From Octopus bimaculoides (Eukaryota): a stretch of 42,365 bases of DNA. Each line of letters begins with the position of its first letter. The stretch's first letter is position 1. The stretch is taken from contig NC_069007.1 in NCBI RefSeq assembly GCF_001194135.2, positions 21,737,238 through 21,779,602 of the forward strand, given 5' to 3'. The notes under the pieces were generated by a model. That model did not search any database. It worked only from the letters and a program-made list of their open reading frames with translations, and was not told the origin of the DNA. Shown in pieces: positions 3,808 to 41,994 of the stretch. The position numbers and the translations under genes are program-made.

Positions 3808-3959
3808 TGTTTGCTTTGTGATTGCCTGCGATTTTATTTTTGATCTTCTATATAAATGAAGACATTTCCTCCGTCTGGCTGTTTTTCTCTCTACAAAATG
3901 GAAAGTTACATTGTGGAACAGTCATTTTAATGAGTTATATTTATTTATTTATCACCCAA

Positions 3960-10643: not shown

Positions 10644-11223
10644 CTAGCACTAAGGTATCTTGAGGNNNNNNNNNNNNNNNNNNNNNNNNNNNNNNNNNNN
10701 NNNNNNNNNNNNNNNNNNNNNNNNNNNNNNNNNNNNNNNNNNNNNNNNNNNNNNNNNNNNNNNNNNNNNNNNNNNNNNNNNNNNNNNNNNNNNNNNNNNN
10801 NNNNNNNNNNNNNNNNNNNNNNNNNNNNNNNNNNTATATATATATATTGTGTGTGTGTTAGAAAGAAAGCTTGAGCAAGCAAAACTTGTGGCATCACTTA
10901 AGAGCTTGTAATTTATAATTCAAACGTAATAACAAAATAGTTTGAATAAATAAGGGATTTAGAAATAATGCTTAAAGTCACTAATGTGTGTGTGTGTGTG
11001 TGTGTGTGCGTATATATTTGTATATATATGTACACATACATTATGTCTATACACACGCACCTGTTTTCTGGGGAGGGTCATTTGTCAATAATAAACACAC
11101 ACTGGTTTTTATTCACTTCTTATTTGTTAGTCAACAAGTTAATCAATTAACCACTTAACTAATCGATTGCCATTGCCTGAGTAATCGTTCGATCAATCAA
11201 TCAATCAATCACTCGGCTTGGTT

Positions 11224-16400: not shown

Positions 16401-18094
16401 CTATAAACATAATTATTATTATAATTTTCTTTAAATATACTTTTAGTAATAAAAGAAAAGTTTCTAAATCTCTGATGTTGAACACCAAAATCCACATCTA
16501 TCTAATTCCGTCCACCCTCCTCGTGAATAGGTGATAGCCTGAAACACATTCGCTGNNNNNNNNNNNNNNNNNNNNNNNNNNNNNNNNNNNNNNNNNNNNN
16601 NNNNNNNNNNNNNNNNNNNNNNNNNNNNNNNNNNNNNNNNNNNNNNNNNNNNNNNNNNNNNNNNNNNNNNNNNNNNNNNNNNNNNNNNNNNNNNNNNNNN
16701 NNNNNNNNNNNNNNNNNNNNNNNNNNNNNNNNNNNNNNNNNNNNNNNNNNNNNNNNNNNNNNNNNNNNNNNNNNNNNNNNNNNNNNNNNNNNNNNNNNNN
16801 NNNNNNNNNNNNNNNNNNNNNNNNNNNNNNNNNNNNNNNNNNNNNNNNNNNNNNNNNNNNNNNNNNNNNNNNNNNNNNNNNNNNNNNNNNNNNNNNNNNN
16901 NNNNNNNNNNNNNNNNNNNNNNNNNNNNNNNNNNNNNNNNNNNNNNNNNNNNNNNNNNNNNNNNNNNNNNNNNNNNNNNNNNNNNNNNNNNNNNNNNNNN
17001 NNNNNNNNNNNNNNNNNNNNNNNNNNNNNNNNNNNNNNNNNNNNNNNNNNNNNNNNNNNNNNNNNNNNNNNNNNNNNNNNNNNNNNNNNNNNNNNNNNNN
17101 NNNNNNNNNNNNNNNNNNNNNNNNNNNNNNNNNNNNNNNNNNNNNNNNNNNNNNNNNNNNNNNNNNNNNNNNNNNNNNNNNNNNNNNNNNNNNNNNNNNN
17201 NNNNNNNNNNNNNNNNAATTGATTACCATTTCTTGCAAATCGGGCAATCACTACTATATTCTTTACCATTGTCCGCACTGTTTTTAAATTCCGTAACGTT
17301 GAATTTAAGAATGCTAATAAAATCATTAGATTATATTAATTATAAGTTGATAGGGCGTCAGGATAGAATGGCCTAAAGAACTTGATTCAGGTTTTCTTAT
17401 GATGAGAATTTAAATGCTGCCGAGGTCGACTTTGCCTTTCATCCATTCGGAGTGGTTAAGAAAATAATTACCAGTCTGAGTGCGGTATATTGTCGAAATG
17501 CTCGAACCTCAGACGGGAAGCTTTGCGCTTATCTGTTCCAGATCTATACGTTATGAGTTCGAATTCCGCCTCCTATCACCGGGCTTCTGGTAACAGGGAA
17601 TTAATCTTTCCGAACACCGCTAACGGTGATCAGCTTCTAATTCCGGGACGAGGAACGAGTCGATGGATGAACATCTCGGTCTCAATAAAACAAAACCGAT
17701 CAAACAATTTTTTTTTAGTTGAGGGAGATAACATTTAAAACACCGATAGTTCTCGTAAAACGTGGGGAGATAAACCAACTTTTTGCTGGTAGTGAGATAA
17801 ACATTATGAGACCCTACTATGTATTATTTCGTATGTAGAACATTCCCTTGAACTTAATGCCCCCTAATATTTTTCTTCGAAGATAAATATTTGTATTTAA
17901 AATTTTATTTTATTCTAAGAAGCCTTTTAAAATAATTTTAATACGAAGCTATCAGCTATTGAAGCAGCTTTGCATGTATGATTGATTAAGAAATAGTGTT
18001 TGTTTGCAAGCCACCCATTAAAAGCATTCAGCGCCACATTCACCTACTTTTTGCCCCCTTTTGAAAATAGAAGAAAATCAGAAATAAATTCGAT

Positions 18095-19119
18095 AAATTT
18101 TCAGAGCAACACCTGCACGATTTTCATAAAGAAAAAAAAAACAAAAAACAAAAAAAGTCAAGTACCCTGACTTTATAATATGCTACAAATCCCTTNNNNN
18201 NNNNNNNNNNNNNNNNNNNNNNNNNNNNNNNNNNNNNNNNNNNNNNNNNNNNNNNNNNNNNNNNNNNNNNNNNNNNNNNNNNNNNNNNNNNNNNNNNNNN
18301 NNNNNNNNNNNNNNNNNNNNNNNNNNNNNNNNNNNNNNNNNNNNNNNNNNNNNNNNNNNNNNNNNNNNNNNNNNNNNNNNNNNNNNNNNNNNNNNNNNNN
18401 NNNNNNNNNNNNNNNNNNNNNNNNNNNNNNNNNNNNNNNNNNNNNNNNNNNNNNNNNNNNNNNNNNNNNNNNNNNNNNNNNNNNNNNNNNNNNNNNNNNN
18501 NNNNNNNNNNNNNNNNNNNNNNNNNNNNNNNNNNNNNNNNNNNNNNNNNNNNNNNNNNNNNNNNNNNNNNNNNNNNNNNNNNNNNNNNNNNNNNNNNNNN
18601 NNNNNNNNNNNNNNNNNNNNNNNNNNNNNNNNNNNNNNNNNNNNNNNNNNNNNNNNNNNNNNNNNNNNNNNNNNNNNNNNNNNNNNNNNNNNNNNNNNNN
18701 NNNNNNNNNNNNNNNNNNNNNNNNNNNNNNNNNNNNNNNNNNNNNNNNNNNNNNNNNNNNNNNNNNNNNNNNNNNNNNNNNNNNNNNNNNNNNNNNNNNN
18801 NNNNNNNNNNNNNNNNNNNNNNNNNNNNNNNNNNNNNNNNNNNNNNNNNNNNNNNNNNNNNNNNNNNNNNNNNNNNNNNNNNNNNNNNNNNNNNNNNNNN
18901 NNNNNNNNNNNNNNNNNNNNNNNNNNNNNNNNNNNNNNNNNNNNNNNNNNNNNNNNNNNNNNNNNNNNNNNNNNNNNNNNNNNNNNNNNNNNNNNNNNNN
19001 NNNNNNNNNNNNNNNNNNNNNNNNNNNNNNNNNNNNNNNNNNNNNNNNNNNNNNNNNNNCCCCGATTTTTTTTTTTTTTTTTCTTAGTGAAAATCGTCCA
19101 GGTGTTAGTCTGAAAATTT
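18095..19119. repeat. Inverted repeats flanking an assembly gap
   Basis: aaattttcagagcaacacctgcacgattttcataaagaaaa (18095-18140) matches the reverse complement of 19066-19119. Confidence 0.7.
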
Positions 19120-21956: not shown

Positions 21957-22964
21957 CTGTTTTAATAAAGATTTTGTACCTATTTTCATGTGTGTTTATT
22001 TCATTTTCCTTCTTCAGTTTTCTGTTAACATTTTTATGCATTTAAATATGCACCAAGAGCGACGTTAAATGAGACAAACTGACTGAAGTTGAGTCCCCCC
22101 CACCATTTATTTCTTTAGAAAAAAAAAAGGATATAAAGTCAAAAAAAGATGTAACTTGAACTGGCCTAAGTTGAAGTATGCCTGTATATATATTTATGTA
22201 CGTGCTCACACGCATACACACACTACACTTGTTCCATTATCCTTTTACCACATTTCACAACACTATTTCATGCCTTTACACCAGTCCTCACAAAGTCTTT
22301 GAGAGTCATTGAAATAATAAAAAATACAAAAAACAATATATTTACCCAAGGAGGGAGCTTCTATTTTAACAGTAAATATATAGGTTGATATATNNNNNNN
22401 NNNTATATATATATATATATATATAAATATAATAATATAATATATATAAGCATAGTTTTTGTCAACTGACATACTGTAATAAGTATGTACTATGAGTACT
22501 CAGATTGGTGCACCACTAAGACTCCAGCTTGAAATACAACTGAAAAATGGGGTTTTGAGACTGCCTATCAAGGCTGGCTAGAAGTGGTTTCTCTTTGAGC
22601 AGGTGGGTATAGATTAAAATATATTTTTCTCAACTGATACCAAATGCTTTGCATTTTCATTTTCTATATATATAGACACACACAAACATATATATATATA
22701 TATATACACACACATGAACATAGACATCTTGAAAGTAAATAAACAGCCTTCATTATGCAGTTTTATCTATGCGGATGCTAACTGGTGCTTCAGACTTGTT
22801 TGAAGACATGTCTACTAAATACAAGCTGAAGTATTTAAGTGAATCAAATGATTTTTTGCTTCTAGAAATAAATGTTTAAAAAAGACGGTGTCTATTTACT
22901 TCTGAGATGTGTGTGTGTATTATATGAGCTATGAATAAAGCAACCAATGGAGGGAAGAAGGGGC

Positions 22965-23694: not shown

Positions 23695-23880
23695 CATCAT
23701 CATCATTCAATGTCTGTTTCCCACGCTGGGGTGGACAGTTCGGTAGGAGCTGGCAAAGCTGGAGAGCTGTACCAGACTCCATTGTCTGTTTTAGTATAGT
23801 TTCAATGGTTGGCAGCCCTTCCTAATGCCAACCACTTTACAGAGCATACTGGGTGCCTATTTTACATGGCACCAAGTACT
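23695..23880 (-). mobile_element. SINE family C copy with a (GAT)n tail
   Basis: catcatcatcat tail and gcccttcctaatgccaaccac...gggtgc body shared with other copies. Confidence 0.75.
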
Positions 23881-24169: not shown

Positions 24170-24375
24170 ACTCTAGGCACAAGGCCAAGAATTTTTGGGG
24201 AGGAGGCCAGTCGATTAGATCGACCCCAGAATGCAACTGGTGCTTAATTTATCAACCCTGAAAGGATGAAAGGCAAAGTCGACCTTGGTAGAATTTGAAC
24301 TCAGTACGTGAAGGCAGACGAAATACCACTAAGCATTTCACCCGGTGTGCTAACAATTCTGCCAGCGCGTGGCCT
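24170..24375 (-). mobile_element. SINE family B copy
   Basis: gtcgattagatcgacccc...aaaggatgaaaggcaaagtcgacc...gaatttgaactca. Confidence 0.9.
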
Positions 24376-25538: not shown

Positions 25539-26245
25539 CTGGAGATTGAAGAAGAGAAAAAAAAGAAAAAAAAAAGAAAACAAAGAACCTCATAAACCGT
25601 ATAGTTTTTAAAATTTCAGAAAATGTAACTGATATTTGCAATGAGGAGCAGAAAAACAGAGACAGCAACATCTCCGGAAACCACGAACAACATCAGCATT
25701 CCATTGCAATGTTAAGAGAAAGTGTGTAACTTCTTGTCTTAACTATAAATGAATTATTGAATTAATTGTTTAGTGTACAGAGAGAAGAAATACAAATAAT
25801 AGAGTCTGTGGGATGCTGTATATCTTCACAAAGACTCCATTTGTATAAAAAAGGAAGACCGAGTTTTATCATCTAACAAGCAATCAATTAGCTAGAGTAA
25901 CTGAACCGGATGCTATGGTGTTAAGATTTTGCTTCTAGAAAAGTAAATCCATATTTGGAATATTTGGTGAAATCTGCATTTCTTCCTCAGTTGGCTGAAC
26001 GGCATTCACCTCATTTATCACCTGTCTACAATTGGCAACATCCATTTCATGTTTTTTGTCGCTCAATTCTGAAATTTAATAAAGATGACAAAATAAAAAA
26101 ATTAGTTATTTCATTTCCATTTTTTGGTTCATTCATTAGTTACAAGATAACGCGTGTTTACTTCAAAAACAATGTAAATACATAAGCATTAAATTTCACA
26201 GAGTAATCTGAAAGCTAAAGGATTAAGATTATGTAAGATTAAGTA

Positions 26246-29200
26246 TTACAATATCCAGAAGTTCAAATACTTACTCTTCATGAATACAAAAATGTCATTC
26301 ACAGAACACCTCTCTGAAGGGTCTCCAGTCAATAAGCTGCTTATTAAGGAAGCCAAACTCCCCCATGCATCAACCAAGCTCTTCATTATATCCGGATAAC
26401 GAGAATACTTCAAAGTAAAAAGAAATAAGAGTCTCATTACAATAACAGCATACATATATATATATACATAAATTTAATAATAAGGGTAGAAATTGATATT
26501 AATCAATTAAAACCAGTGGTCTAGCATATTAAAAAAAATCCGAAGATTAAAATTATATTACATACAAAATTAAGAGGAATGACCAGCAAAAGTGGACCCC
26601 TTTTACAGTCTGGTGTCTTGCTGAAATTTTTTTCTTGAGAACATATTCTTCATGGTTAGGTGATTCGGCATCTATTTCTAGCATATAGGAGTCCACNNNN
26701 NNNNNNAATTGCAGCCAATTTGATGCTTTACCATTAATTCAGTTTTAGCTAGATCTTAATTCAATTTTTTTTTTTTTGCACTATGATGAACCAGTGGTAA
26801 ACTATTTGGTTGGTGCATAATTATTGTGGCTTTTTTTCAATAAATTTTATTCAACAAAAAAATTTAAACAAAACGCCAAGCAGAAATTGAAGTAGATGGT
26901 GAATATGCTCCAGAATAATCATTTAAAGATGTTTACGTTAAATGTTGTTATTGTTTTTGTTGAATAAAATTTATTGAAAAAAAAGCTGCAATAATTATGC
27001 ACCAACCTAATACATTTTGACATAAAATAATTGAAATTTGATTTGGTATATATATATGTGTATACATATATATATATTATTTACTAAACACAATATATGT
27101 TTTTATGAGCTACTATCAATTTCATACGATGACAGATAGCATTTTTAACACAGCCAGTGCTTCAGCACAATCCTCAGGCTGCACTCATGCATGCATGCAT
27201 GCATGTATGTATTAAGAATTCAGTAGAAGTTACAAAGTGACTCAAAGACTGAAATTTTCATGCATTGGCATATATCAAATGTGTTCACACACACACGCAC
27301 ATACATGCAGACACATGTATGTATATCCACATGTGTGTCTGTAAGTTTCCTTCCTTTTGTAAAAGAGTTAGTCGAACTTAAGGAAAACTTGACTGCTATT
27401 TTGACCAAATCAAGTAAGCGTATACAAGTTCCCTGGGTGACAGTCACAATTAGAAAAGGTGATGTTCCAGTGTGATGCATTTGCAAGAAACAATAAGCAG
27501 AACATTTGATAGAAATTTCTATGGAGAAGCAGAGGGAGCAGAGACGACAGGAGGATGGGAAGAGGAAAAATTGACTGGTGTGTGCAATTACAATGGGGTA
27601 GATGCTATGAGTTCAAACCACCCATTCTCCTACCCTGCACCAAAAAAGAAAAAAAAAGAAGAAAAAAATTAGAAGGAACAATACCATTTTTGGTATGCCG
27701 TACTTGACTTGTTTCAACAACAACTTCCATGGGTCATTGTGCCACTTAATGAACAGACAAACCAAACCAACAGAGAAAAGGTCACACTTCTCTGTCACTG
27801 AACATGTATGATAGTTCTTACAGAAATCCTGAGTCATGTCCAAAACTGCAAAACACAAATATGGATACATACAGGGTAACAACCACAAAGGATCTTGGGA
27901 ATATTTTTATAATTAATAATAACCTCACTGCCTATACAATTATACACACGCACACACATATATATACATACCATATTTTAATGTGTTAAAATATGAGATT
28001 TGTTGGTTGAAATACCAAAACTTAGCTTGACTGGAAACTGAAGTGTCTTAGATTCAAATGGAACATCTGTAGGTATGAGAGGAATTTTGGGAATAAAGAC
28101 ATTTTCTTTTTTGTGACTACCTGTTATGATTGTTGCCTGTAGGACAAGGGGATTCACGGAAGTAACAGTTAAGTGAGTTCCATTACACAGGTGAGATGGG
28201 TCAAAATTCCTAAGCAATATATAATGAGAGCACCCAGTTTTAGTGTGAAGTTATGCGGTGGCATCCCAGTGGGTTTAAGAGTGTTCAGAAATTCAACAGG
28301 GTATTGAACAGATATGCATGTGTGGATGTGTGTTTTAATCCAAATGTAAATGAAAATTATCACACATACACTCACACATGCAGTCACATACATATACTAA
28401 GACAGATACATACAGACATACATTCACACATGTCAGTCATTACATGTATATGCATGTCTAGATGTGTGTGTGTATTTAATAACGTACCTAATGCAGAAAC
28501 ACACACACACTCATATACAAAATATGACGTCATGGTGATGGTATAAAATGTCCTATAGAAAGATTATTTGAGATAAAATGTTATATTGTTTTAATGCAAA
28601 TGAAAAAACATTAGATGTTGGCACTCGTGAATTGTAATACTATTGACTTGTAAAATTTGATTTAGTTTGGTCGAGTTGTTTGAGAATGCATAGCGAACAG
28701 ACAGACAGACAAAGAATTTTATAAATACAGAGATAGATACACCAACCTTCTTGGTATTTTCCAGAATTTCTGTCACAATGTAACAGGAATTTCTTGCAAC
28801 AATCATAGTGGATTTCAGGAGCTGCATACATTAGTGTAACACCTTCACTGAAAAATTCGCTGTTGGCATCCTTTGATGCCCCGAAATCAGTCAGTTTTAG
28901 TTTGATGCAGTTTTGAAAAGCATAGACACAAACATTCTGGGCTGTAGAATGAAAATGGATAAAATACGTATGAGACAAAAGCGGAACAGACAGAAACAAA
29001 AATAGTCAAAGGCACCCAGTCCACACTGTAGGGTAGCTGGCATTTGGAAGAACATCCAGCTGTAAAAAAAAAACCATGCCAAAACAGACACTGAAGTCTG
29101 GTGCAGGCTACTGCCTGGTCAGCTCCTGTCATATACACACACCACACACACACACACAATCACCACCACCACCACCACCACCATCACCACTACTTACACA

Positions 29201-32200
29201 TGAGCAACAGACTTACTAGATTTTTTTAGGGTCACCCCAAATGTTAGGGCCCCACCTATCATCAACAATCTTGCCTGGTGAAGGTACATTCTTAATATAG
29301 CTAGAACTATTTCTCAAAGACTGGCCCTTCTCATCAGGACCTGAAAATACTTCAGTTCCAACCCTACACCAAGCTTCAACAATTCCTGACAAATGGGGCC
29401 CAGAATGCAGGTTTGCTCCCACACACAAAGACATCATAATCCACATCCAGAAAAAAGCCATTTGATTGATATTCCAGCCTCTTGTTACCCACAACTGTAT
29501 TGTCTCTGCTCTCTCAGCTCTAATAATGGCCTCTGCTTCTCAGAACTTGCTGGTGTCATACCACCTCCCAACCCATTCATCTGTTCTCTTCACAACATGT
29601 GTGTTGTGTCCAAACTTCTAAGCCCCACACTGACTACTATTCTCATTACTTCTTCCCCCCAATATAATCCCACTGGAATCTTTTTGCAGCTCACATCCTT
29701 TCACCAGGTCTTGCTTTGCAACAGTTTAAGTGGTACATTGACAGCATCAATCTTGCCAGTTTTGGATGCCAATGAAGTTAGTGATGGACAGAGGTACTAA
29801 AAGAAAAATCACAACAAAAAACATCACACACATGCACATAACCAAAAGACATGGAGACTCACGTTTGATATCAAGGTGAAAGATATTCTGATGATTACAG
29901 TGGTAAATTGCTTCAGCAATCTGAGTTATGAAACTGTCCAGCTGTTCATCGATGATCAAATTCCATTCCATTTGCATAGCAGAATGCAGATCTAAACCTG
30001 TAGAGAAACAACATCAATCAACATACATTTAATATTCTTTACTTGCAGGAGCCGTGAATATTTTAAAGAATTAATGGTAAACCTATTGGGTTATTTCTGA
30101 AAACTTTATCCCTGAATGCGTGGCCTGTGTTGTGTCTATATCAAAAGACAGTTGCTCAGCTGCTAATCATTGAAAAGTGAAGGAAATTGGTACATGCTCT
30201 TCACCTTTCCATATATTGTGACTTAAATGAGGCCAGATGAAATTGTTGTCTATGACTATATGTAAAATGGTGTGAGAACTCTCGGTTGGGATGTCCCAAA
30301 TTTTCATAGGAATTAGAAGCAGCCTGAGAGATAAATAACATCAGATACACACACACACACATACAGAAACAAACAAACAGAACTCAACCAGAGCTCAGTT
30401 TTGCTGAAGTGGAAGAATCTTCTTGAAAACTAAGAACGGTATGTCACCAGTCATCCTCATCTTTTGCCATCACCTCCAGGAAGTTCAAGATACTTAGATC
30501 AGTTCTCATCCTTTCATCCCATATCTTCCTGGATTTCCCTCTTCCACAAGCTTCAGTCTGTCCTTTTCCTTAATGGTAAGTCAACTTTGTATGTATTTTT
30601 TGTGTGCTATATCCCTTTACACCAAGGGAGACTCAGCCATATGATAATTAAAAAGAGATGAATTATAATGTACTGAGGTCAATATAGCCAGCTAAAAACC
30701 CTTTCAGATATTGGACCCATTATGGTTCCACACTAACGACTGACAACAGTGAAATAATTAAACAACAAAACCAAATTTCAACTTACCACAATATTCTAGG
30801 AGAATCTCATAGCGGTCACTTTTGACACAGAACCCCAAAATTTTGGAAATGTTATGGCAGTTCAGCCGACATAGGTGTTCTACCTCTCTTGCTCTGAATT
30901 TGCTCACTTTTATCTGGTAAAAAAATGAGAGGGAAATGATAAAAATTAATGGGGCAAAAAACAAGAGGTTTGGTTAAGGCAGGGAAAAATTATTCTCATT
31001 GAATTTAATGTCTACTTTTCCATACTTGTATAAGTCAGATGAACTTTGTTGAGGCAGATTTTCTAAAGCCATTTGAGCGTGGCTGTTGCCAGTACCGCTG
31101 GATTGGCACATGTGCCGGTGGCATGTAAAAAGCACTCACTACACTCTCGGAGTGGTTGGCATTAGGAAGGGCATCCAGCTGTAGAAATTCTGCCAGATCA
31201 GATTGGAGCCTGGTGTAGCCATCTGGTTTGCCAGTCCCCAATCAAATCGTCCAACCCATGCTAGCATGGAAAACGGACGTTAAACGATGATGATGATGAT
31301 ATATACCAGAGTAAGCACATAAATGCGAAACAAGGTGGAATAGTACTTGAATACCAGAGGTAGAGTAATATGCTTTTTAATAAAGTCTGTATATATATAC
31401 ATATATATATATTAATACACACACATACACAATGGGCCTCTTAAAATTCAAAATTTCTGTCAATGAAATTCCACACACATACCACTGTTTGGTCAAGCTG
31501 CCATAGTGTAAGACACCAGCTGACAATGACCATCCAATGGGAACAAACTCTCAAAGGAAAAATGAAATTTTCATTTAAAACAACAATAATGAAAATGGAA
31601 AAAGGGAGGTAAATCAGAATTACTTCTTTCCTGACAAAGTTTCGAGCACTTCGGATGTCAAGGCACAAATCAACGGATGTAGCAAATCCTCCGGGAGTGA
31701 AACTTCCTTGGGGCAAATAACCATCGTCAAGACATAGCTGTGGAAGAATAAGAACAGATAAAAAAGGGTCAGCTGGGTCTGTTGAGTGAGAATAGGATAG
31801 TTAGTGAGGGAGTCAGGTAATCAGGATGAGAGTAGCTTAACATATATTAAGGTCCAATATGGAGAAGCTGCTTTGGAAAACCTTTGAAATTTTTATTAAT
31901 TTCAAAAAAAGGTGCAAAACTTCTTACCACACAGCCATGCCTGCACCTAACTGTACAAGAAATTGTTAAAATATTTCGTGTATTGTAGAAATACAACCAT
32001 TTTATTGAAGATAAACTTCTAACAACGAAATCTTATATGGACCCTCAAAGGTCACATGGACCTCAGTTGATAGCCATTGCTTTATAGCTTTAGATAAAGT
32101 CTCTCAAGAGCCAAGGTTCAAAAAACAAAAAAAGAGAAAAAAAGAGAAAGAAAAAGATTTATTTTAAGTCCATTTGTAAGTTTTAAAAAATCCTTTTAAT

Positions 32201-33587
32201 GTCATCAACTCTATAAATTTAACAGAAATGTATTGCCTTTAGTCTTACCTCATCCTTGAGGACGACAGCCGTATCTGGATATTGCATTCTATGTTCAAGC
32301 AATTTCAAAATGTCTTCATTATTGCCATGTAAGAGATTTCTTAAAAGAGAACAAAACACAAATCAATACTTTATGCTCCCACTAATTCCTGCCACTCTAC
32401 TTACACATTGACATACCTCTACACACACATCACTTCTTCCCTTACGCCCATCTCATAACACCGATACATTCTTATGCACGCATGTACACCTCTGCTCTTT
32501 TCTTCCTTCTAAATTTGACCCCACAGAAACGCATTCCCTTTTAGCTTCACAAAGCCAATTTCTTACCACCCTGCAAACCTCATCTTCAACCAATCCTTGG
32601 TTTCTGTTGCAGATATTTGGGAGTATTTTGATGAACGTTGGATTTCTTTGTGGGAAACATTTGAGAAGGCTTTGGTGAGTTCTAACCATACTGCTGAGAG
32701 AATCTTGTTCCTCCTCCTCTTTGTGTCTCTTAAATGAAAGTCAGAAAAGGTCTATGGAAAGAAAATAACAACAAAAAGGCATATATTTACTTGTATGTGT
32801 GGCGTCCGTCCGGAATATTTCTTCTCACATCACCCAAATTCACAATGTTCCTGTCCGAAGTATCTAAACACAACAACAACAGAAATAATAATAATAATAA
32901 TAATAATAAGGATGGTAATAATAATAATAATAAGATGAAGAAGAATAATAATGGTGGTGGTGGTTTCAAATTTTGCCAGAAGGGCAGCAATTTTGTGGGA
33001 GGGGATGAAAGGTAAAGTCAACCGTGGCAGAATCTGAACTCAGAACATAGTGGCAGATGAAATACCACTAGGCATTTCGCCCCATGGGCTGACGATTCTA
33101 CCAGTTCACTGCCTTGAAGAGGACGAAGGAGGAGGAGGAGGAGAATAATAATAATGATAATAATATTAATAATCATCATTTCTCCTATAGGCACAGGGCC
33201 TGGAATTTTTTTTGGTGGAGAGACTAGTCAATTACATCGACCCCAGTGTTTCACTGGTACTTGATTTGTCAACCCTGAAAGGATGAAAGGCAAAGTCGAC
33301 CTCGACGGAATTTGAACTCAGAACGTAAGGACAGATGAAATGCCACTATGCTCATGATTCTGCCAACAACAATAAAGATAATAATTCTTTCGACTGCAGG
33401 CAGAAGGCCTGAAATTTTGTGGGTGAGTGGATAGTTGTGGATACTGACCACAGTATATAACTAGTATTTATTTCATCAACATCCCAAAAGGATGAAAGGC
33501 AGAGTTGTCCTTGTTGATATTTGAACTTGGGACATAAGGAATAAAAATCAAGTTTCATTAAGCATCCAGAGAAGAAAAAAAGAAATG

Positions 33588-33625
<38 letters not shown>

Positions 33626-34702
33626 CGTTTCATTTTGTTTCATCTCTAGTAGTCATCAGGGAGTCACACCCCTGGATTAGCAGCTCTGGAATTTGAACTC
33701 ACTACATTTCAATCAATGAGCAGTCTGATTGCTGATCATTATCAGTCATTTTATTCTTGGATGTGTACATAACTGTTGACTGGATTTGAACTCATAACCT
33801 TTATTAATAAAATGACAGACAAGCAAACCCAGAACAGCCAATTGGGGGAAAAACTTCCCAAGAGAAGATCAAAACCAACTTACCAATAGCCGGTGCTACA
33901 TTTACTTCTTCTTCATTTTTTACATCTGAAAACCAAAAAAAATTGTCAATATATTTATATTTAAAATACTTTATAAATAAATTTTTATAAATATCACAAA
34001 TGGTGCCTAGAAGGAATTTGAACTTGGTGCATTTTAGTAAATCAGTAGTTTGATTGCCAATTATTATCAGGTAGCTGATTCCTGAATGTGTATGTAGCTG
34101 TTGACTGGATTTGAACTTATAACCTTTATTTATTAAGATGACAGTCAAACCCAGAACAACTAACCAGAACAAAACTTCCCAGAAGAATATCAAGAATACT
34201 TTACCTGTAGCTAGTACTTTGTAGATATCTTCGAGATCTAAAAAAAAAAGAAGAAAAATGGTTATTATGTTTATGTTTATAATACTTTATAAATATAAAA
34301 AAAAAAAAATTAATAATAGATGCAGCTTCGTTAACCACCAATTCTTTCATCATTGATCCAGAATAACATGGTACACCCAATTGCAAACGTTGTTATGCTT
34401 ATCACAGACTGACCTGTGATAGCAAGAGTCAGCAATCAGTCAAAGATTCTGTTTGGATTGCAAAATCTTGCTCCTGAAACCAACCACATTTCTTTGCCAT
34501 CCAGAATCCACTGACTTTCGCATATTTCTAGGCCAGCATGTCTGGACTGGGGGGCTAAGTCAATTAAATTGACTCCAGTATTCAGCTGGTACCTGTTCTA
34601 TCAACGCCAAATGGAGGAAAGGCAAAGTTAACCTCGGCAGAATTTGAACTCAGAACATAAAGACAGATGAAATACTGCTAACCATTCTGCCAGTTTGCTG
34701 CT

Positions 34703-34735
<33 letters not shown>

Positions 34736-35226
34736 GTAATAATAACTCTTTCTAATATTGGCACAAGGTCAGCAATTCTGAGGAAAAGGAGGAGAAGCAA
34801 GTTGATTACACTGATTCCAGTACTTGAAGATTAACTGCAACGTTGACCTTACTGGGATTTGAGCTCAGTATGTAAGGAACAGAAAGAAAAGCCACTAAAC
34901 CTTTCATCAATCTCGAAAGGATGAAAGGAGGCAAAGGTGACCTCAGCAAGATTTGAACTCAGAACAGACAGAACCAGAAGAAATTCTGCTTCGCATTTTG
35001 TCCGACATGTTGATGATTCAGCCAGCTTGTTACCTTCTAACCTATCTTACTAATTACCAAAAAAGATCAAATAAAATGAATTAAGATAAAAGATAAATCA
35101 ATCAATGTGGCTGAATCGAAGAAGAGTGAAAGAGTGAAACAATGCAGTTCAATACTCACTTTTGCTCTCATCAGCAGCATGCTGTTTGAGATCAATTATC
35201 ATGGAATATCTGACTTGTTCCTCCAT
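26246..35226 (-). CDS. Multi-exon Ser/Thr protein kinase (non-RD), NIK/Tpl2 (MAP3K14/MAP3K8)-like; about 436-444 aa
   Basis: Hand-spliced chain: 35226-35160, 34237-34205, 33925-33884, 32863-32829, 32751-32579, 32339-32249, 31737-31624, 30913-30787, 29997-29863, 28941-28747, 27845-27685, 26407-26275. All introns are GT-AG with matching phases. Kinase motifs in order: PGGFATSV, FVRKE, REVE, HLDIKPQN, DFG, YAAPE, CDLFSVG, DPSER. Family call rests on recalled similarity (KEIKVSKFRAREVE vs NIK KKVRLEVFRAEEL and Tpl2 KLIPVDQFKPSDVE). The kinase core is solid; the N-terminal joins are less so. Confidence 0.85.
26275..26407 (-). CDS. Kinase exon 12, subdomains X-XI: YSRYPDIMKSLVDAWGSLASLISSLLTGDPSERCSVNDIFVFMK
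   Basis: tactttgaag acceptor in phase 0; DPxxR motif; strong donor A|GTAAGT. Without splicing the frame reads through to TAA at 26246. Confidence 0.85.
26805..27010. mobile_element. Tc1/mariner MITE in kinase intron 11
   Basis: TA-TTTGGTTGGTGCATAATTA ... TAATTATGCACCAACCTAA-TA; inverted arms of about 55 bp; TA TSD. Confidence 0.88.
27685..27845 (-). CDS. Kinase exon 11, subdomain IX: (V)LDMTQDFCKNYHTCSVTEKCDLFSVGLVCLFIKWHNDPWKLLLKQVKYGIPKM
   Basis: ttttgcag acceptor in phase 1; D-x-x-S-x-G motif and DPW; donor ATG|GTATTG in phase 0. Confidence 0.88.
27993..28306 (-). pseudogene. Helitron RepHel Pif1-helicase C-terminal fragment in kinase intron 10
   Basis: QYPVEFLNTLKPTGMPPHNFTLKLGALII, then a +2 TA slip, then LLRNFDPSHLCNGTHL...FIPKIPLIPTDVPFESKTLQFPVKLSFGISTNKSH. 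Confidence 0.9.
28747..28941 (-). CDS. Kinase exon 10, subdomains VIb-VIII: (P)QNVCVYAFQNCIKLKLTDFGASKDANSEFFSEGVTLMYAAPEIHYDCCKKFLLHCDRNSGKYQE
   Basis: ttctacag acceptor; C|CC completes HLDIKPQN; DFG and APE present; donor AAG|GTTGGT; 195 nt. Confidence 0.93.
29863..29997 (-). CDS. Kinase exon 9, subdomain VIa-b: (G)LDLHSAMQMEWNLIIDEQLDSFITQIAEAIYHCNHQNIFHLDIK
   Basis: ctctacag acceptor; donor C|GTGAGT; 135 nt, phase 1-1; catalytic loop HLDIK. Confidence 0.93.
30430..30560 (-). pseudogene. RTE LINE extreme C-terminus remnant in kinase intron 8
   Basis: CGRGKSRKIWDERMRTDLSILNFLEVMAKDEDDW*HTVL, similar to the GRPRKTW...DR..WR terminus. Confidence 0.7.
30787..30913 (-). CDS. Kinase exon 8, subdomains III-V: IKVSKFRAREVEHLCRLNCHNISKILGFCVKSDRYEILLEYC
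   Basis: ttttaccag acceptor; donor G|GTAAGT; alphaC Glu and hinge LLEYC. Confidence 0.92.
31035..31280 (+). mobile_element. SINE family C copy in kinase intron 7
   Basis: ggaagggcatccagctgtagaaa...ccaacccatgctagcatggaaaacggacgttaaacgatgatgatgat. Confidence 0.9.
31624..31737 (-). CDS. Kinase exon 7, subdomains I-II: LCLDDGYLPQGSFTPGGFATSVDLCLDIRSARNFVRKE
   Basis: cttccacag acceptor; donor GAA|GTAATT; Gly-loop-like segment and beta3 Lys. Confidence 0.88.
32249..32339 (-). CDS. Kinase exon 6: NLLHGNNEDILKLLEHRMQYPDTAVVLKDE
   Basis: ctcttttaag acceptor; donor GAG|GTAAGA in phase 0. Confidence 0.8.
32579..32751 (-). CDS. Kinase exon 5: TFSDFHLRDTKRRRNKILSAVWLELTKAFSNVSHKEIQRSSKYSQISATETKDWLKM(R)
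   Basis: ctttccatag acceptor in phase 0 (or ttaag before 32728 in phase 2); donor AG|GTTTGC in phase 2 joins exon 6 in frame. Frame and donor are ambiguous (see findings). Confidence 0.5.
32829..32863 (-). CDS. Kinase exon 4: (D)TSDRNIVNLGD (alternative donor after 32791)
   Basis: gtgtttag|AT acceptor in phase 1; donor GAT|GTGAGA in phase 0, or AA|GTAAAT in phase 2. Confidence 0.55.
32955..33560 (-). mobile_element. Cluster of three SINE family B copies
   Basis: ggatgaaagg(c/t)a(a/g)agt at about 33003, 33281 and 33491, separated by (AAT)n tracts. Confidence 0.85.
33884..33925 (-). CDS. Kinase micro-exon 3 (42 nt): (D)VKNEEEVNVAPAI
   Basis: ttttcag|AT acceptor; donor TTG|GTAAGT; phase 1-1; open frame. 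Confidence 0.7.
34205..34237 (-). CDS. Kinase micro-exon 2 (33 nt): (N)LEDIYKVLAT
   Basis: Poly-T tract then tag|AT; donor CAG|GTAAAG; phase 1-1; open frame. Confidence 0.7.
34520..35035 (-). mobile_element. Cluster of SINE family B copies (2-3)
   Basis: ggcaaagttaacctcggcagaatttgaactcagaac (about 34621) and ggcaaaggtgacctcagcaagatttgaactcagaac (about 34930). Confidence 0.85.
35160..35226 (-). CDS. Kinase coding exon 1 (start): MEEQVRYSMIIDLKQHAADESK
   Basis: GCAGCCATGG Kozak context, in-frame TGA five codons upstream, acceptor tttcag before 35255, donor A|GTGAGT in phase 1. Confidence 0.7.
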
Positions 35227-35913: not shown

Positions 35914-36180
35914 TATATGTGTGTNNNNNNNNNNNNNNNNNNNNTATATATACATATATATATATACACACACATATATGTGTGTATGTTTGTCCCCCCC
36001 CCCCCCACCATCACTTGATAACCGATGCTAGTGTGTTTACGTCTCTGTAACTTAGCGGTTCGGCAAAATTGTCCGATAGAATAAGTATTAGGCTAACAAA
36101 GAATAAGTTCTTCGGTCGATTTGTTCGATGAAAGGCGGTGCTCCAGCATGGCCGCAGGCAAATGACTGAAAACAAATAAA
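35570..36180 (+). mobile_element. SINE family A: a 3' fragment followed head-to-tail by a near-complete copy with a central microsatellite
   Basis: 3' module at 35570-35710, head at 35710-35845, (TA)n with a short gap, 3' module at 36010-36180. Confidence 0.88.
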
Positions 36181-37010: not shown

Positions 37011-37559
37011 CAAAAACAATTATCTAAATATAAAAAAAAAAAAATATTTAAAACAAAAGAAAAAGACTTAGAAGTGGAGAAATGAAATGAAATGTATGTG
37101 AAATTATGTAGAAACCTTTTATTAAAACAGATATAAGCAAAAAAAAAAAAAAAAATNNNNNNNNNNNNNNNNNNNNNNNNNNNNNNNNNNNNNNNNNNNN
37201 NNNNNNNNNNNNNNNNNNNNNNNNNNNNNNNNNNNNNNNNNNNNNNNNNNNNNNNNNNNNNNNNNNNNNNNNNNNNNNNNNNNNNNNNNNNNNNNNNNNN
37301 NNNNNNNNNNNNNNNNNNNNNNNNNNNNNNNNNNNNNNNNNNNNNNNNNNNNNNNNNNNNNNNNNNNNNNNNNNNNNNNNNNNNNNNNNNNNNNNNNNNN
37401 NNNNNNNNNNNNNNNNNNNNNNNNNNNNNNNNNNNNNNNNNNNNNNNNNNNNNNNNNNNNNNNNNNNNNNNNNNNNNNNNNNNNNNNNNNNNNNNNNNNT
37501 ATATATATATATATATATATATGCATATATATATATATATGTATATATACACACACTCC

Positions 37560-37759: not shown

Positions 37760-38037
37760 TTCGAACGTAGTCGTTGCCAGTGCCACCAGACTGGCTCCTG
37801 TGCAGGTGGCACGTAAAAAGCACCATTTGAGCGTAGCCGATGCCAGTACCACTAGACTGGCCCTCATGCTGGTGGCATGTAAAAAGCACCCACTACTGGC
37901 GTTAAGAAGAGCATTCAGCTGTAGAAACTCTGCCAGATCAGATTGGAGTCTGGTGCAGCCATCTGGTTCGCCGGTCCTCAGTCAAACCGTCCAACCCATG
38001 CTAGCATGGAAAGCGGACGTTAAACGATGATGATGAT
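37760..38037 (+). mobile_element. SINE family C copy
   Basis: Ends ccaacccatgctagcatggaaagcggacgttaaacgatgatgatgat; internal repeats of gtggca(c/t)gtaaaaagcacc. Confidence 0.9.
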
Positions 38038-38212: not shown

Positions 38213-38438
38213 TCATCATCATCATCGTTTAACGTCCGCTTTCCATGCTAGCATGGGTTGGACGATTTGACTGAGGACTGGTGAAACCGGATGGCAACAC
38301 CAGGCTCCAGTCTGATTTGGCAGAGTTTCTACAGCTGGATGCCCTTCCTAACGCCAACCACTCAGAGAGTGTAGTGGGTGCTTTTACGTGTCACCCGCAC
38401 GAAAACGGCCACGCTCGAAATGGTGTCTTTTATGTGCC
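38213..38438 (-). mobile_element. SINE family C copy, inverted relative to 37760-38037
   Basis: atcatcatcatcatcgtttaacgtccgctttccatgctagcatgggttggacg; runs into a gap. Confidence 0.9.
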
Positions 38439-39071
38439 NNNNNNNNNNNNNNNNNNNNNNNNNNNNNNNNNNNNNNNNNNNNNNNNNNNNNNNNNNNNNN
38501 NNNNNNNNNNNNNNNNNNNNNNNNNNNNNNNNNNNNNNNNNNNNNNNNNNNNNNNNNNNNNNNNNNNNNNNNNNNNNNNNNNNNNNNNNNNNNNNNNNNN
38601 NNNNNNNNNNNNNNNNNNNNNNNNNNNNNNNNNNNNNNNNNNNNNNNNNNNNNNNNNNNNNNNNNNNNNNNNNNNNNNNNNNNNNNNNNNNNNNNNNNNN
38701 NNNNNNNNNNNNNNNNNNNNNNNNNNNNNNNNNNNNNNNNNNNNNNNNNNNNNNNNNNNNNNNNNNNNNNNNNNNNNNNNNNNNNNNNNNNNNNNNNNNN
38801 NNNNNNNNNNNNNNNNNNNNNNNNNNNNNNNNNNNNNNNNNNNNNNNNNNNNNNNNNNNNNNNNNNNNNNNNNNNNNNNNNNNNNNNNNNNNNNNNNNNN
38901 NNNNNNNNNNNNNNNNNNNNNNNNNNNNNNNNNNNNNNNNNNNNNNNNNNNNNNNNNNNNNNNNNNNNNNNNNNNNNNNNNNNNNNNNNNNNNNNNNNNN
39001 NNNNNNNNNNNNNNNNNNNNNNNNNNNNNNNNNNNNNNNNNNNNNNNNNNNNNNNNNNNNNNNNNNNNNNN

Positions 39072-39719: not shown

Positions 39720-39970
39720 AAAACACCTTTTGAGCATGGTTGTTGCCAGAACCGCCTGACTGGCTCTCGTGATGGTGGCACGTAACAGCACCCACTTCAC
39801 TCTCGGAGTGGTTGGCGTTAGGAAGGGCATCCAGCTGTAGAAACTTTGCCAGATCAGACTGGAGCTGGTGCAGCCTTCTGGCTCGCCAGTCCTCAGTCGA
39901 ACCGTCCAACCCATGCCAACATAGAAAGTGGACGTTAAACGACGACGACGATGATGATGATGATGATGAT
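39720..39970 (+). mobile_element. SINE family C copy
   Basis: ggaagggcatccagctgtagaaac...gtggacgttaaacgacgacgacgatgatgat. Confidence 0.88.
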
Positions 39971-41756: not shown

Positions 41757-41985
41757 ATTTCTTTCAGTCATTTGACTGCGGCCATGCTGGAGCACCACCT
41801 TCAGCCGAGCAAATCAACCCCAGGATTTATTCTTTGTAAGCCTAGTACTTATTCTAGCATGGTTTGATGGAGGACTGACAAGCTAGTAGGCTGCACCAGG
41901 TTCCAATCTAATCTGGCAAGGTTTCTACAGCAGGATGCCCTTCCTAATGCCATCTACTCCGAGAGTGTAGTGGGTGCTTTTTATA
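41757..41985 (-). mobile_element. Fused SINE family A 3' fragment and SINE family C fragment
   Basis: The family A module breaks at gtacttattct and continues directly with agcatggtttgatgg...ggatgcccttcctaatgcc. Confidence 0.75.
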
Positions 41986-41994
41986 TGTGTGTAT

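What the first reader, a model, noticed from the sequence alone, without database searches (positions are those of the whole stretch)
26246..35226. Hidden divergent NIK/Tpl2-like non-RD kinase fragmented into 12 small exons
No ORF in the track exceeds one exon, yet the exons splice in phase into a complete catalytic domain. Unusual features are a Gly-loop lacking the first and third Gly with an apparent one-residue insertion (TPGGFATSV), HLD instead of HRD, GVTLMY in place of GTxxY, and a roughly 150-aa N-terminus I cannot match, with a basic KRRRNK patch (possible NLS). Non-RD kinases are enriched among innate-immune signalling kinases, and NIK and Tpl2 act in NF-kB and ERK signalling. A fast-evolving lineage-specific immune kinase is therefore plausible but inferred.
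Basis: partly seen in the sequence, partly recalled or inferred. Interest (0 to 1): 0.7.

Follow-up and report, generated by a model that had tools for sequence, protein, structure and literature searches.

The report
Divergent NIK/Tpl2-like octopus kinase gene
This is a real, intact, spliced octopus protein-kinase gene that public annotation already holds under misleading names. It belongs to an unstudied mollusc-wide kinase family whose closest characterised relatives are the immune-signalling kinases NIK and Tpl2/COT.

Summary
The window is Octopus bimaculoides. The exon chain is real. Twelve minus-strand GT-AG exons (35226 down to 25935) reproduce RefSeq XP_014772131.1 (434 aa) exactly, so the gene is annotated rather than hidden. 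NCBI has named it and its orthologues MAP3K7-like, SBK1 and CDPK2.

- The "KRRRNK" exon (32579-32728) is absent from all public models and is frame-broken in O. sinensis.

The N gap (26697-26706) is intronic and does not affect the coding sequence.

TPGGFATSV, HLD and GVTLMYAAPE are all present. Lys, Glu, Asp, Asn and DFG are intact. dN/dS against O. sinensis is 0.30.

The protein belongs to an uncharacterised mollusc-wide family with these marks:
- an HLD catalytic loop;
- a 26-44 aa spacer after APE;
- a terminal GN-x-P-[DN]-F..L motif.

A profile of the pre-kinase extension plus N-lobe hits NIK first and Tpl2 next in the PDB. An AlphaFold model's best 15 Foldseek matches are all COT or NIK. 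The C-lobe shows no specific affinity, and pairwise scores to Tpl2 are weak. The NIK/Tpl2-like reading is therefore supported at family level, orthology is unresolved, and an immune role is untested.

The parts
35160..35226 (-). Coding exon 1 (Met1 to aa 22). It holds the conserved N-terminal short motif YSMIIDLK at 35185-35208.
   Evidence: The family alignment shows a recurring [FY]x[DE]LK near the N-terminus.
34205..34237 (-). Coding exon 2 (aa 23-33), in the disordered N-terminal region.
   Evidence: pLDDT is below 50 for residues 14-63.
33884..33925 (-). Coding exon 3 (aa 34-47).
   Evidence: The splice sites are conserved in O. sinensis.
32791..32863 (-). Coding exon 4 (aa 48-72). It splices directly to exon 5 at 32339.
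32579..32728 (-). It is not an exon in any public model and lies in a well-conserved part of intron 4.
   Evidence: It is absent from P0001 and P0002. The O. sinensis counterpart has -2/+19 bp indels and a premature stop. Protein versions that include it are not in the 15-billion-sequence collection.
32249..32339 (-). Coding exon 5 (aa 72-102). It holds most of the NIK/COT-like pre-kinase extension (NLLHGNNEDILKLLEH...AVVLKDE).
   Evidence: pLDDT is above 90. The profile hits NIK's EGVLLTEKLKPVDxEY.
31624..31737 (-). Coding exon 6 (aa 103-140). It holds the end of the extension, the degenerate G-loop TPGGFATSV (31672-31698) and beta3 with Lys139 (FVRK).
   Evidence: (K139 invariant).
30787..30913 (-). 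Coding exon 7 (aa 141-183). It holds the short beta3-alphaC link KFRAREVEHL with Glu150, and runs to the hinge (LLEYCG).
   Evidence: This stretch aligns to NIK without gaps.
29863..29997 (-). Coding exon 8 (aa 183-228). It holds alphaD-alphaE and the start of the catalytic loop, H223-L224-D225 (non-RD).
28747..28941 (-). Coding exon 9 (aa 228-293). It holds KPQN, the DFG motif (D246), the activation segment, GVTLMYAAPE and the first half of the 43-aa post-APE spacer.
27685..27845 (-). Coding exon 10 (aa 293-346). It holds the second half of the spacer (predicted helix 288-303), DLFSVG (subdomain IX) and alphaF.
26697..26706 (.). Assembly gap (10 N) inside intron 10. It is 978 bp after the exon-10 donor and 289 bp before the exon-11 acceptor.
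26275..26407 (-). Coding exon 11 (aa 347-391). It holds alphaG-alphaI and Arg379 (DPSER), and ends at the donor FMK|gtaagt.
26246..26274 (-). It is intronic.
   Evidence: It is also conserved in O. sinensis at the intron-typical level.
25935..26068 (-). Coding exon 12 (aa 391-434 plus stop), outside the finding's coordinates. It holds the family-wide extreme C-terminal motif SPNIPNMDLLF (25938-25970).
   Evidence: P428 invariant; motif present in 27 of 27 members.

Best explanation
WHAT IT IS
The locus is an intact, single-copy Octopus bimaculoides gene with 12 coding exons on the minus strand (window 35226 to 25935). It encodes a 434-aa serine/threonine-type protein kinase, RefSeq XP_014772131.1. 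The protein is a fast-evolving octopod member of an uncharacterised kinase family found across molluscs (bivalves, gastropods, cephalopods). The family's closest characterised relatives are the two 'STE-unique' MAP3Ks, NIK (MAP3K14) and COT/Tpl2 (MAP3K8).

SHOWN
- The exon structure.
- Purifying selection.
- Retention of beta3 Lys139, alphaC Glu150, the catalytic loop H-L-D225-x-K-x-x-N230, and DFG Asp246.
- A confidently predicted pre-kinase extension (aa 64-107) that matches the NIK/COT extension in both sequence and predicted fold.
- A beta3-alphaC link of NIK/Tpl2 length.
- A family-specific enlarged spacer after APE (43 aa in Octopus, predicted as two helices).
- An invariantly placed C-terminal motif: an acidic run followed by G-N-[IVLMF]-P-[DNK]-F-x-x-L.

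INFERRED MECHANISM
- Like NIK and COT, the kinase probably does not depend on activation-loop phosphorylation. It has no Arg before the catalytic Asp, and the extension probably braces the N-lobe and alphaC.
- It is therefore probably controlled by abundance and by partners that dock on the conserved terminal short motifs. The C-terminal motif is a candidate degron or docking site.
- It probably acts as an upstream (MAP3K-level) kinase.
- The octopod G-loop (Gly1 and Gly3 lost, one residue inserted) is derived and may weaken nucleotide binding.
- A role in NF-kB/ERK-type immune signalling follows only by analogy with NIK and COT.
For: GENE MODEL
- The 12 exons reproduce P0001 exactly.
- The locus in the chromosome assembly is identical to the window.
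- Orthologues exist in O. sinensis and O. vulgaris, with conserved splice sites for exons 3-12.
- dN/dS is 0.30 over 400 codons, with dS 0.30.

KINASE
- Pfam Pkinase scores 94 bits.
- K139, E150, H223, D225, K227, N230, D246, G248, P269, E270, D314 and R379 are invariant in 20 family members.

FAMILY
- HMMER against 1.84 billion representatives gives Argonauta P0006 (39% identity, full length, E=6e-72) and P0007 (E=5e-34). Mollusc proteins that share HLD, DFG[ST][SA], a 26-44 aa spacer and the C-terminal motif follow.
- All named members are molluscs, and all are 'uncharacterized' or named from weak best hits.

NIK/COT AFFINITY
- The extension plus N-lobe profile against the PDB puts 11 NIK sequences on top (57-61 bits, E about 1e-15, a nearly gapless 95-residue alignment). 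Tpl2 follows at 53 bits and the best other kinase at 48.7 bits.
- The extension-only profile has NIK as its single PDB hit, at the homologous position.
- The whole-family profile scores Tpl2 at 130 bits, second of all PDB kinases, and NIK at 119 bits.
- CAMK hits need 6-8 residue insertions between beta3 and alphaC. NIK and Tpl2 need none.

STRUCTURE
- The template-free AlphaFold2 model has pLDDT 80, with the extension above 90.
- Its 15 best Foldseek matches among 350,542 PDB chains are all COT or NIK. They also give the longest alignments and the highest query TM-scores (0.51-0.57 against 0.40-0.48).

LITERATURE
- NIK and Tpl2 orthologues could not be identified in Aplysia by domain annotation (PMC9334734).
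Against: - The specific NIK/COT signal sits almost wholly in the pre-kinase extension. On its own it is weak: 12.9 bits and E=1 for NIK, and about 4 bits for Tpl2.
- The N-lobe proper scores about the same for NIK, Tpl2, Snf1 and CDPKs.
- The C-lobe profile puts TTK, CDPK, twitchin and p38 first. NIK and Tpl2 are not among its best 60.
- The catalytic loop HLDxKPENxC and the TPEYxAPE motif look like MLCK and twitchin. A scallop member searched alone hits MYLK4 and twitchin first, with Tpl2 ninth.
- The octopus protein searched alone hits Aurora A first, at 47 bits.
- Human Tpl2's own best relatives are STE20 kinases and NIK (118-134 bits). It scores only 20-62 bits against family members.
- No phylogeny was made, and no RNA-seq or biochemical data were available.
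- The degenerate G-loop could mean weak or no catalysis.
Confidence: 0.6

Rival explanations
1. It is an orphan CAMK-like (MLCK/twitchin-type) kinase. The pre-kinase extension resembles that of NIK and COT only by convergence or by chance, and the family has no special relationship to NIK or Tpl2.
For: - The catalytic loop HLDxKPENxC and the TPEYxAPE motif match MYLK4 and twitchin. Scallop P0034 searched alone hits MYLK4 at 65.8 bits and twitchin at 62.4 bits first.
- The 5-sequence and 20-sequence whole-domain profiles put CDPKs first.
- The C-lobe profile does not list NIK or Tpl2 among its best 60.
- Tpl2 scores only 20-62 bits against family members.
- The extension alone is not significant, at E=1.
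Against: - CAMK alignments need a 6-8 residue insertion between beta3 and alphaC. NIK and Tpl2 align without one.
- No EF-hand or other extra domain was detected.
- No other STE kinase, and no CAMK, reaches NIK or Tpl2 once the extension is included.
- Foldseek puts COT and NIK in all of the first 15 places.
Confidence: 0.25
2. In octopods the protein has become a pseudokinase or scaffold. The G-loop has lost two of its three glycines and gained a residue, so it may no longer bind ATP productively. It would then signal through its conserved docking motifs only.
For: - The G-loop is TPGGFATSV in Octopus, KRGGFSRLV in Argonauta and FKGGFSKSV in P0007. Bivalves and gastropods have LGxGxFGxV.
- The enlarged 43-aa spacer and fast evolution are consistent with relaxed constraint: about 38% identity between Octopus and Argonauta, and dN/dS of 0.30.
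Against: - All residues needed for phosphotransfer are kept in every octopod sequence: K139, E150, D225, N230 and D246.
- Gly2 (G118) is invariant.
- dN/dS in the kinase core is 0.32, which shows constraint.
- From general knowledge, active kinases with atypical G-loops exist.
Confidence: 0.12
3. It is a pseudogene or an annotation artefact with no functional product.
For: - No RNA-seq evidence could be examined here.
- The exact O. bimaculoides protein occurs only in genome-derived sources.
Against: - The 434-codon frame is intact across 12 exons with canonical splice sites.
- Orthologues with the same structure exist in O. sinensis, O. vulgaris and Argonauta.
- dN/dS is 0.30, with no frame-breaking indels in the exons. 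A neighbouring non-exon stretch does have them.
- Related members are found as uninterrupted ORFs on transcript-sized contigs of sequencing-run assemblies; one run (SRR3401653) is listed in a study of bivalve transcriptomes.
Confidence: 0.03

Closest known systems
NIK (MAP3K14, NF-kB-inducing kinase)
   Same: - It has a pre-kinase extension with the motif G-[VI]-[LI]-L...L.P....Y directly before beta1.
- The beta3-alphaC link has the same length, with an F-[KR] motif (NIK VFRAEE, octopus KFRARE).
- The catalytic loop is non-RD.
- It is the best PDB hit of the extension plus N-lobe profile and the only hit of the extension profile.
- It is among the 15 best structural matches.
   Different: - From memory, NIK has HGD where the family has HLD.
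- The post-APE spacer aligns as a gap against both COT/Tpl2 and a CDPK. From memory, NIK has no such spacer either.
- NIK is a protein of about 950 aa, with a TRAF3-binding N-terminus and an IKKalpha/p100-binding C-terminus (from memory). The octopus protein is 434 aa and has a family-specific C-terminal motif.
- The C-lobe shows no special similarity.
COT/Tpl2 (MAP3K8)
   Same: - It ranks second of all PDB kinases for the whole-family profile, at 130 bits. The alignment runs from the pre-kinase extension to the end of the domain.
- It takes the five best Foldseek places.
- Its catalytic loop is non-RD (HHD). One family member, P0028, also has HHD.
- YMSPE in the activation segment is shared with many family members.
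   Different: - Tpl2 has an extra insertion before beta1 (dsdvllipw, in the alignment) that the family lacks.
- Tpl2 has no post-APE spacer.
- Pairwise scores are low, at 20-62 bits.
- Tpl2's own nearest relatives are STE20 kinases and NIK.
- The extension adds only about 4 bits.
MLCK/twitchin-type CAMK kinases
   Same: - The catalytic loop is HLD-x-KPEN-x-C, and T-P-E-[FY]-x-A-PE precedes the P+1 loop.
- They are the best single-sequence PDB hits of the scallop member.
- NCBI names some family members 'MLCK-like'.
   Different: - They need a 6-residue insertion between beta3 and alphaC relative to the family.
- The family has no Pfam-detectable extra domain such as Ig, Fn3 or EF-hand.
- They are not the best structural matches.
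SBK1 (NKF1 family), CDPK2 and MAP3K7-like: the names NCBI has given these Octopus proteins
   Same: They are eukaryotic protein kinases, which share the fold with the octopus protein.
   Different: - Three different names have been given to the O. bimaculoides protein and its O. sinensis orthologue, which shows they come from weak best hits.
- There is no EF-hand domain, so it is not a CDPK.
- TAK1/MAP3K7 ranks low in the PDB searches.
- SBK1 could not be tested, because no SBK1 sequence was at hand.

Membership tests
Eukaryotic protein kinase superfamily (Pfam PF00069) | Profile match above the curated cut-off | tested here: met
   94.3 bits against a cut-off of 31.7, E=1e-26.
Eukaryotic protein kinase superfamily (Pfam PF00069) | Catalytic residues: beta3 Lys, alphaC Glu, HxD Asp, catalytic-loop Asn, DFG Asp | tested here: met
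   K139, E150, D225, N230 and D246 are present and invariant in 20 family members.
Eukaryotic protein kinase superfamily (Pfam PF00069) | Canonical GxGxxG nucleotide-binding loop | tested here: not met
   The loop is T-P-G-G-F-A-T-S-V. Gly1 and Gly3 are replaced and one residue is inserted. Non-octopod members keep LGxGxFGxV.
Non-RD kinases | No Arg immediately before the catalytic Asp | tested here: met
   The loop is H-L-D. The family has HLD, HHD or HMD.
NIK (MAP3K14) | Pre-kinase N-terminal extension homologous to NIK's and packed on the N-lobe | tested here: met
   NIK sequences take the top 11 places for the extension plus N-lobe profile. NIK is the only PDB hit of the extension profile, though at E=1. 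The extension has pLDDT above 90, and the Foldseek top 15 are all COT or NIK. Packing itself is predicted, not observed.
NIK (MAP3K14) | Reciprocal best similarity or phylogenetic placement with NIK | tested here: inconclusive
   The single octopus sequence hits Aurora A first. The C-lobe profile does not list NIK. The whole-family profile scores NIK at 119 bits, below CDPK and Tpl2. No tree was made.
NIK (MAP3K14) | TRAF3-binding N-terminal motif and IKKalpha/p100-binding C-terminal region | not testable with these tools
   Only kinase-domain constructs are in the PDB. The octopus protein has just 63 disordered N-terminal and about 45 C-terminal residues outside the extension plus domain.
COT/Tpl2 (MAP3K8) | Whole-domain similarity including the pre-kinase extension | tested here: met
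   Tpl2 scores 130 bits, second of 177,635 PDB sequences, aligned over profile positions 112-433. It takes Foldseek ranks 1-5.
COT/Tpl2 (MAP3K8) | Tpl2-specific insertion ahead of beta1 | tested here: not met
   The Tpl2 residues 'dsdvllipw' are an insertion relative to the family profile.
COT/Tpl2 (MAP3K8) | Reciprocal best similarity | tested here: not met
   Human Tpl2's best PDB relatives are MST4/STK24 and NIK, at 118-134 bits. Family members score 20-62 bits, and the octopus protein 20.7 bits.
Calcium-dependent protein kinase (the name given in O. sinensis and O. vulgaris) | C-terminal calmodulin-like EF-hand domain | tested here: not met
   There is no EF-hand match. P0001 ends 44 aa after the FVFMK that closes the kinase domain.
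MLCK/twitchin-type CAMK | HLDxKPENxC catalytic loop | tested here: met
   The octopus loop is FHLDIKPQNVC, and C232 is invariant in the family. The MYLK4 and twitchin alignments show the same loop.
MLCK/twitchin-type CAMK | CAMK-length beta3-alphaC segment and flanking regulatory, Ig or Fn3 modules | tested here: not met
   The MLCK-type kinases (MYLK4, twitchin) carry a 6-residue insertion there relative to the family. CDPKs carry 6-8. No extra Pfam domains were found.
SBK1 / NKF1 (current NCBI name) | Specific similarity to SBK1 | not tested
   No SBK1 sequence or structure was available in the tools. The name has changed between releases and species.

The most novel reading that the evidence does not exclude
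The mollusc-wide family is the long-missing molluscan counterpart of NIK and/or COT/Tpl2, either as an orthologue or as a sister lineage. On this reading it is the MAP3K-level kinase that links TNFR/TLR-type receptors to NF-kB or ERK signalling in molluscs. Its invariantly placed C-terminal motif (acidic run, then G-N-x-P-[DN]-F-x-x-L) would be the degron or docking site through which its abundance is controlled. That would parallel the stability-based control of NIK and COT. The octopod branch would be a rapidly evolving derivative with a remodelled ATP-binding loop and an added helical hairpin.
Probability: 0.3. Interest if true: 0.6.

Novelty: new member of a known kind. Interest (0 to 1): 0.42.

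Why it matters
The gene model itself is already public, so finding it is not news. The placement is what is new. NCBI has named the O. bimaculoides protein and its Octopus orthologues MAP3K7-like, SBK1 and CDPK2. The evidence here puts it in an unstudied family present in bivalves, gastropods and cephalopods. That family shares its pre-kinase extension and predicted fold with NIK and COT/Tpl2.

At least one inventory of mollusc immune genes reports that NIK and Tpl2 could not be identified (PMC9334734). If this family fills that role, it gives a concrete candidate for the upstream kinase of NF-kB/ERK signalling in oysters, clams, abalone and octopus.

The family also offers two testable features:
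- a conserved terminal short motif, which is a candidate degron or docking site;
- a variable helical insert after APE.

For annotation, this is a clear case where names taken from weak best hits mislead.

Tried and rejected
1. I rebuilt it and rejected two parts. The KRRRNK exon is rejected. The read-through 3' end is rejected.
2. A hidden exon in the N gap. Rejected because the protein is collinear in species without the gap, and the O. sinensis counterpart is A+T-rich with no kinase-like ORF.
3. A tandem paralogue array. tblastn of the protein against the whole window finds only the gene itself. The 1.84-billion-representative search shows no further named Octopus paralogue.
4. The Cys-rich insert as a zinc site. 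Rejected because the cysteines are not conserved in Argonauta or P0007, and the insert is predicted as two helices.
5. Word-indexed homologue searches with the protein, the 5-sequence alignment and P0009. They gave few family members and mostly generic kinases. They were useful only for names and taxa.
6. P0008 and P0009 as possible cephalopod 'canonical' paralogues. Rejected because their nearest named relative is the clam Tegillarca, at 76% identity, and the P0008 run (SRR3401653) is listed in a study of bivalve transcriptomes.
7. The N-terminal extension as a strong independent signal for Tpl2. Local hmmsearch shows it adds only about 4 bits.
8. Literature searches for mollusc or octopus NIK/Tpl2. 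They gave only the Aplysia statement that the two could not be identified.
9. Rfam and tRNA scans of the window found nothing.
10. The organism behind P0007 (run SRR26222430) could not be determined.

Full report
ORIGIN AND GENE MODEL

The window is 100% identical, gaps included, to Octopus bimaculoides chromosome record CM046627.1 (assembly GCA_001194135.2). It gives an open frame of 449 codons with GT-AG at every junction and matches Pfam Pkinase at 94.3 bits, E=1e-26. The observation of a spliced kinase is therefore real and far beyond chance.

A homologue search then returned a public O. bimaculoides protein of 434 aa (P0001) and an O. sinensis orthologue of 429 aa (P0002). Both also continue past 'FVFMK' into a further exon. 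With those two changes, 12 exons reproduce P0001 residue for residue. Their coordinates are 35160-35226, 34205-34237, 33884-33925, 32791-32863, 32249-32339, 31624-31737, 30787-30913, 29863-29997, 28747-28941, 27685-27845, 26275-26407 and 25935-26068.

P0001 is XP_014772131.1/.2, UniProt A0A0L8HJJ5. Over time NCBI has named it 'putative MAP3K7-like' and 'SBK1'. The O. sinensis and O. vulgaris orthologues are named 'calcium-dependent protein kinase 2'. The gene is thus annotated rather than hidden, and its names are unstable.

THE ASSEMBLY GAP

The N run at 26697-26706 lies inside the 1277-bp intron between exons 10 and 11. The newer chromosome assembly has the same gap. O. sinensis has no N in the locus. 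There the interval collinear with window 26597-26711 is about 745 bp instead of 114 bp. It is 73% A+T, contains simple and inverted repeats, and has no kinase-like ORF.

The protein is continuous across the junction (GIPKM|YSRYP) in the O. sinensis model. The same point of the protein is uninterrupted in the Argonauta model and in P0007, whose ORF lies uninterrupted on a 1.5-kb transcript-sized contig. The model is confidently helical at this point. The gap probably hides several hundred bases of intron. It does not bear on the coding sequence.

THE REJECTED EXON AND THE MISSED EXON

The stretch 32579-32728 (DTKRRRNK...) is open and in frame in O. bimaculoides. In O. sinensis the same stretch carries a 2-bp deletion inside the basic patch and a 19-bp insertion. 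With the same splice sites it is 167 nt long, runs into a stop, and shifts all downstream exons. Its DNA identity of about 90% matches that of the surrounding intron and of other intron blocks, which are 80-95% identical. Protein versions that include it are absent from the 15-billion-sequence collection. The proposed KRRRNK nuclear-localisation patch therefore has no support.

The real last exon lies outside the finding's coordinates.

SELECTION

I codon-aligned exons 3-12 of O. bimaculoides and O. sinensis. Their splice sites are conserved. This gives dS 0.30, dN 0.089 and dN/dS 0.30. The kinase core gives 0.32, the post-APE insert 0.45 and the N-terminal part 0.18. No exon has a frame-breaking indel. 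This is a constrained, functional gene that evolves rather fast for a kinase. Octopus and Argonauta orthologues are only about 38% identical.

CATALYTIC ANATOMY

The following features are present:
- beta3 Lys139 (FVRK) and alphaC Glu150 (REVEHL);
- the catalytic loop FHLDIKPQN, with Asp225, Lys227 and Asn230;
- DFG Asp246 and GVTLMYAAPE;
- subdomain IX DLFSVG and Arg379.

Each of these residues is invariant in a 20-member family alignment. The loop is non-RD (H-L-D).

The same degeneration is seen in Argonauta and in P0007, but not in bivalves or gastropods, so it is derived.

Between APE and subdomain IX lie 43 residues, where ordinary kinases have about 11. The cysteines in this spacer are not conserved. 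It is predicted with high confidence as two helices.

THE FAMILY

HMMER against 1.84 billion representatives gave only three hits below 1e-30: P0002, P0006 and P0007. P0006 is from Argonauta hians and aligns over its full length at E=6e-72. P0007 is a 398-aa protein from a sequencing-run (Logan) assembly of an unidentified organism, at E=5e-34. A group at 65-100 bits follows.

That group, unlike the other hits, shares four marks:
- HLD (rarely HHD or HMD), followed by KPxN-x-C;
- DFG-[ST]-[SA];
- a post-APE spacer of 26-44 residues;
- a motif at the very C-terminus: an acidic run, then G-N-[IVLMF]-P-[DNK]-F-x-x-L. It is present in 27 of 27 members.

Named members come from Magallana, Saccostrea, Mizuhopecten, Pecten, Argopecten, Mercenaria, Mactra, Mya, Sinanodonta, Potamilus, Tegillarca, Haliotis, Lottia, Patella, Argonauta and Octopus. 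All are 'uncharacterized' or 'hypothetical', or carry names from weak best hits such as wee-1.1, MLCK, SBK1 and CDPK2. Pfam finds only the kinase domain in them. The window holds no paralogue.

WHICH KNOWN KINASES IT RESEMBLES

Single sequences are uninformative:
- The octopus protein alone hits Aurora A first, at 47 bits.
- A scallop member hits MYLK4 and twitchin first, with Tpl2 ninth.

Profiles are more telling:
- The 20-sequence profile scores a CDPK at 132 bits and MAP3K8 (COT/Tpl2) at 130 bits. Tpl2 is thus second of 177,635 PDB sequences. Its alignment starts in the pre-kinase region. NIK scores 119 bits.
- A profile of the pre-kinase extension plus the N-lobe puts 11 NIK sequences first (57-61 bits, E about 1e-15). 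They align over 95 positions with a single one-residue gap, covering NIK's EGVLLTEKLKPVDxEY and its short beta3-alphaC link. Tpl2 follows at 53 bits and Snf1 at 48.7 bits.
- The extension profile alone has one PDB hit, NIK, at the homologous position. That hit is only 12.9 bits with E=1.
- CAMK-type hits need 6-8 extra residues between beta3 and alphaC, whereas NIK and Tpl2 need none.

A template-free AlphaFold2 model built from the family alignment has mean pLDDT 80 and pTM 0.76. Residues 64-107 score above 90 and form strand-helix-strand. Its 15 best Foldseek matches among 350,542 PDB chains are all COT or NIK. They also give the longest alignments and the highest query TM-scores, 0.51-0.57 against 0.40-0.48 for the other kinases listed.

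LIMITS OF THAT RESULT

- The extension adds only about 4 bits for Tpl2.
- The N-lobe proper scores alike for NIK, Tpl2, Snf1 and CDPKs.
- The C-lobe profile puts TTK, CDPK, twitchin and p38 first, without NIK or Tpl2 among the best 60.
- The catalytic loop looks MLCK-like.
- Human Tpl2's own nearest relatives are STE20 kinases and NIK at 118-134 bits. It scores only 20-62 bits against family members.

I therefore file the family as NIK/COT-like, with moderate confidence. I do not file it as an orthologue of either.

MECHANISM

Shown: an intact kinase core, a non-RD loop, a structured NIK/COT-like extension, and conserved terminal short motifs.

Inferred, from what is established for NIK and COT: activity that does not depend on activation-loop phosphorylation, control by abundance and binding partners, and action at the MAP3K level. 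The C-terminal motif is a candidate degron or docking site. From memory, its V/I-P-[DN] core preceded by acidic residues loosely recalls COP1-type 'VP' degrons. I did not test this. The degenerate octopod G-loop leaves a pseudokinase reading open. The immune role is analogy only.

CONTEXT AND NOVELTY

An in-silico inventory of Aplysia immune genes states that NIK and Tpl2 orthologues could not be identified by domain annotation (PMC9334734). My other literature searches found nothing on this family. The gene model is public. The family placement and its shared marks appear not to have been described.

Noticed in passing
window 25938-25970 (-), and the C-termini of P0006-P0009, P0013, P0014, P0019-P0021, P0028, P0029, P0031, P0033, P0034, P0043, P0050, P0061, P0070 and P0293-P0299: A short linear motif sits at the very C-terminus of every family member: an acidic run, then G-N-[IVLMF]-P-[DNK]-F-x-x-L. 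Its partner is unknown. From memory, it loosely resembles acidic-VP degrons.
   Followed up: partly
window 35185-35208 (-), and alignment A3 columns about 180-190: A second short conserved motif lies near the N-terminus of most family members, in an otherwise disordered region: [FY]-x-[DE]-L-K (YSMIIDLK in Octopus).
   Followed up: no
window 32579-32790, 30542-30713 and 34280-34530: Intron blocks are 90-95% identical to O. sinensis, as conserved as the exons or more so. They could be regulatory elements or simply slowly diverging sequence.
   Followed up: partly
window 33003-33351, 33487-33540, 34602-34673, 34915-34965, 24253-24334, 9369-9447 and others: An interspersed repeat of about 80 bp (...GGCAAAGTCGACCTCGACGGAATTTGAACTCAGAACGT...) occurs about 10 times in the window, five of them in introns of this gene. 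Neither the tRNA scan nor Rfam matched it.
   Followed up: partly
window 31080-31299, 37841-38037, 38213-38400, 39737-39954, 41863-41987 and 23695-23873: A second interspersed repeat of about 220 bp, ending in a GATGATGA run, occurs about 8 times on both strands.
   Followed up: partly
window 1-489 (-): A reverse-transcriptase fragment (Pfam RVT_1, 45 bits) is cut by the window edge, so a retrotransposon remnant lies here. Nearby ORFs at 3673-3921 and 5694-5960 (-) look retroelement-like by eye but gave no Pfam hit.
   Followed up: partly
L004 and L005 (Argonauta hians contigs BAAFZT010000075.1 and BAAFZT010000069.1): The identical Argonauta orthologue is encoded on two contigs. Each has an ARID plus RFX-DNA-binding gene upstream. 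This is either a pair of haplotigs or a recent segmental duplication.
   Followed up: no
window 6853-7400, 10666-10834, 11888-12112, 16556-17216, 18196-19059, 22394-22403, 35925-35944, 37157-37499 and 38439-39071: Nine further assembly gaps bring the total to 3483 N in the window. All persist in the chromosome-level assembly.
   Followed up: partly
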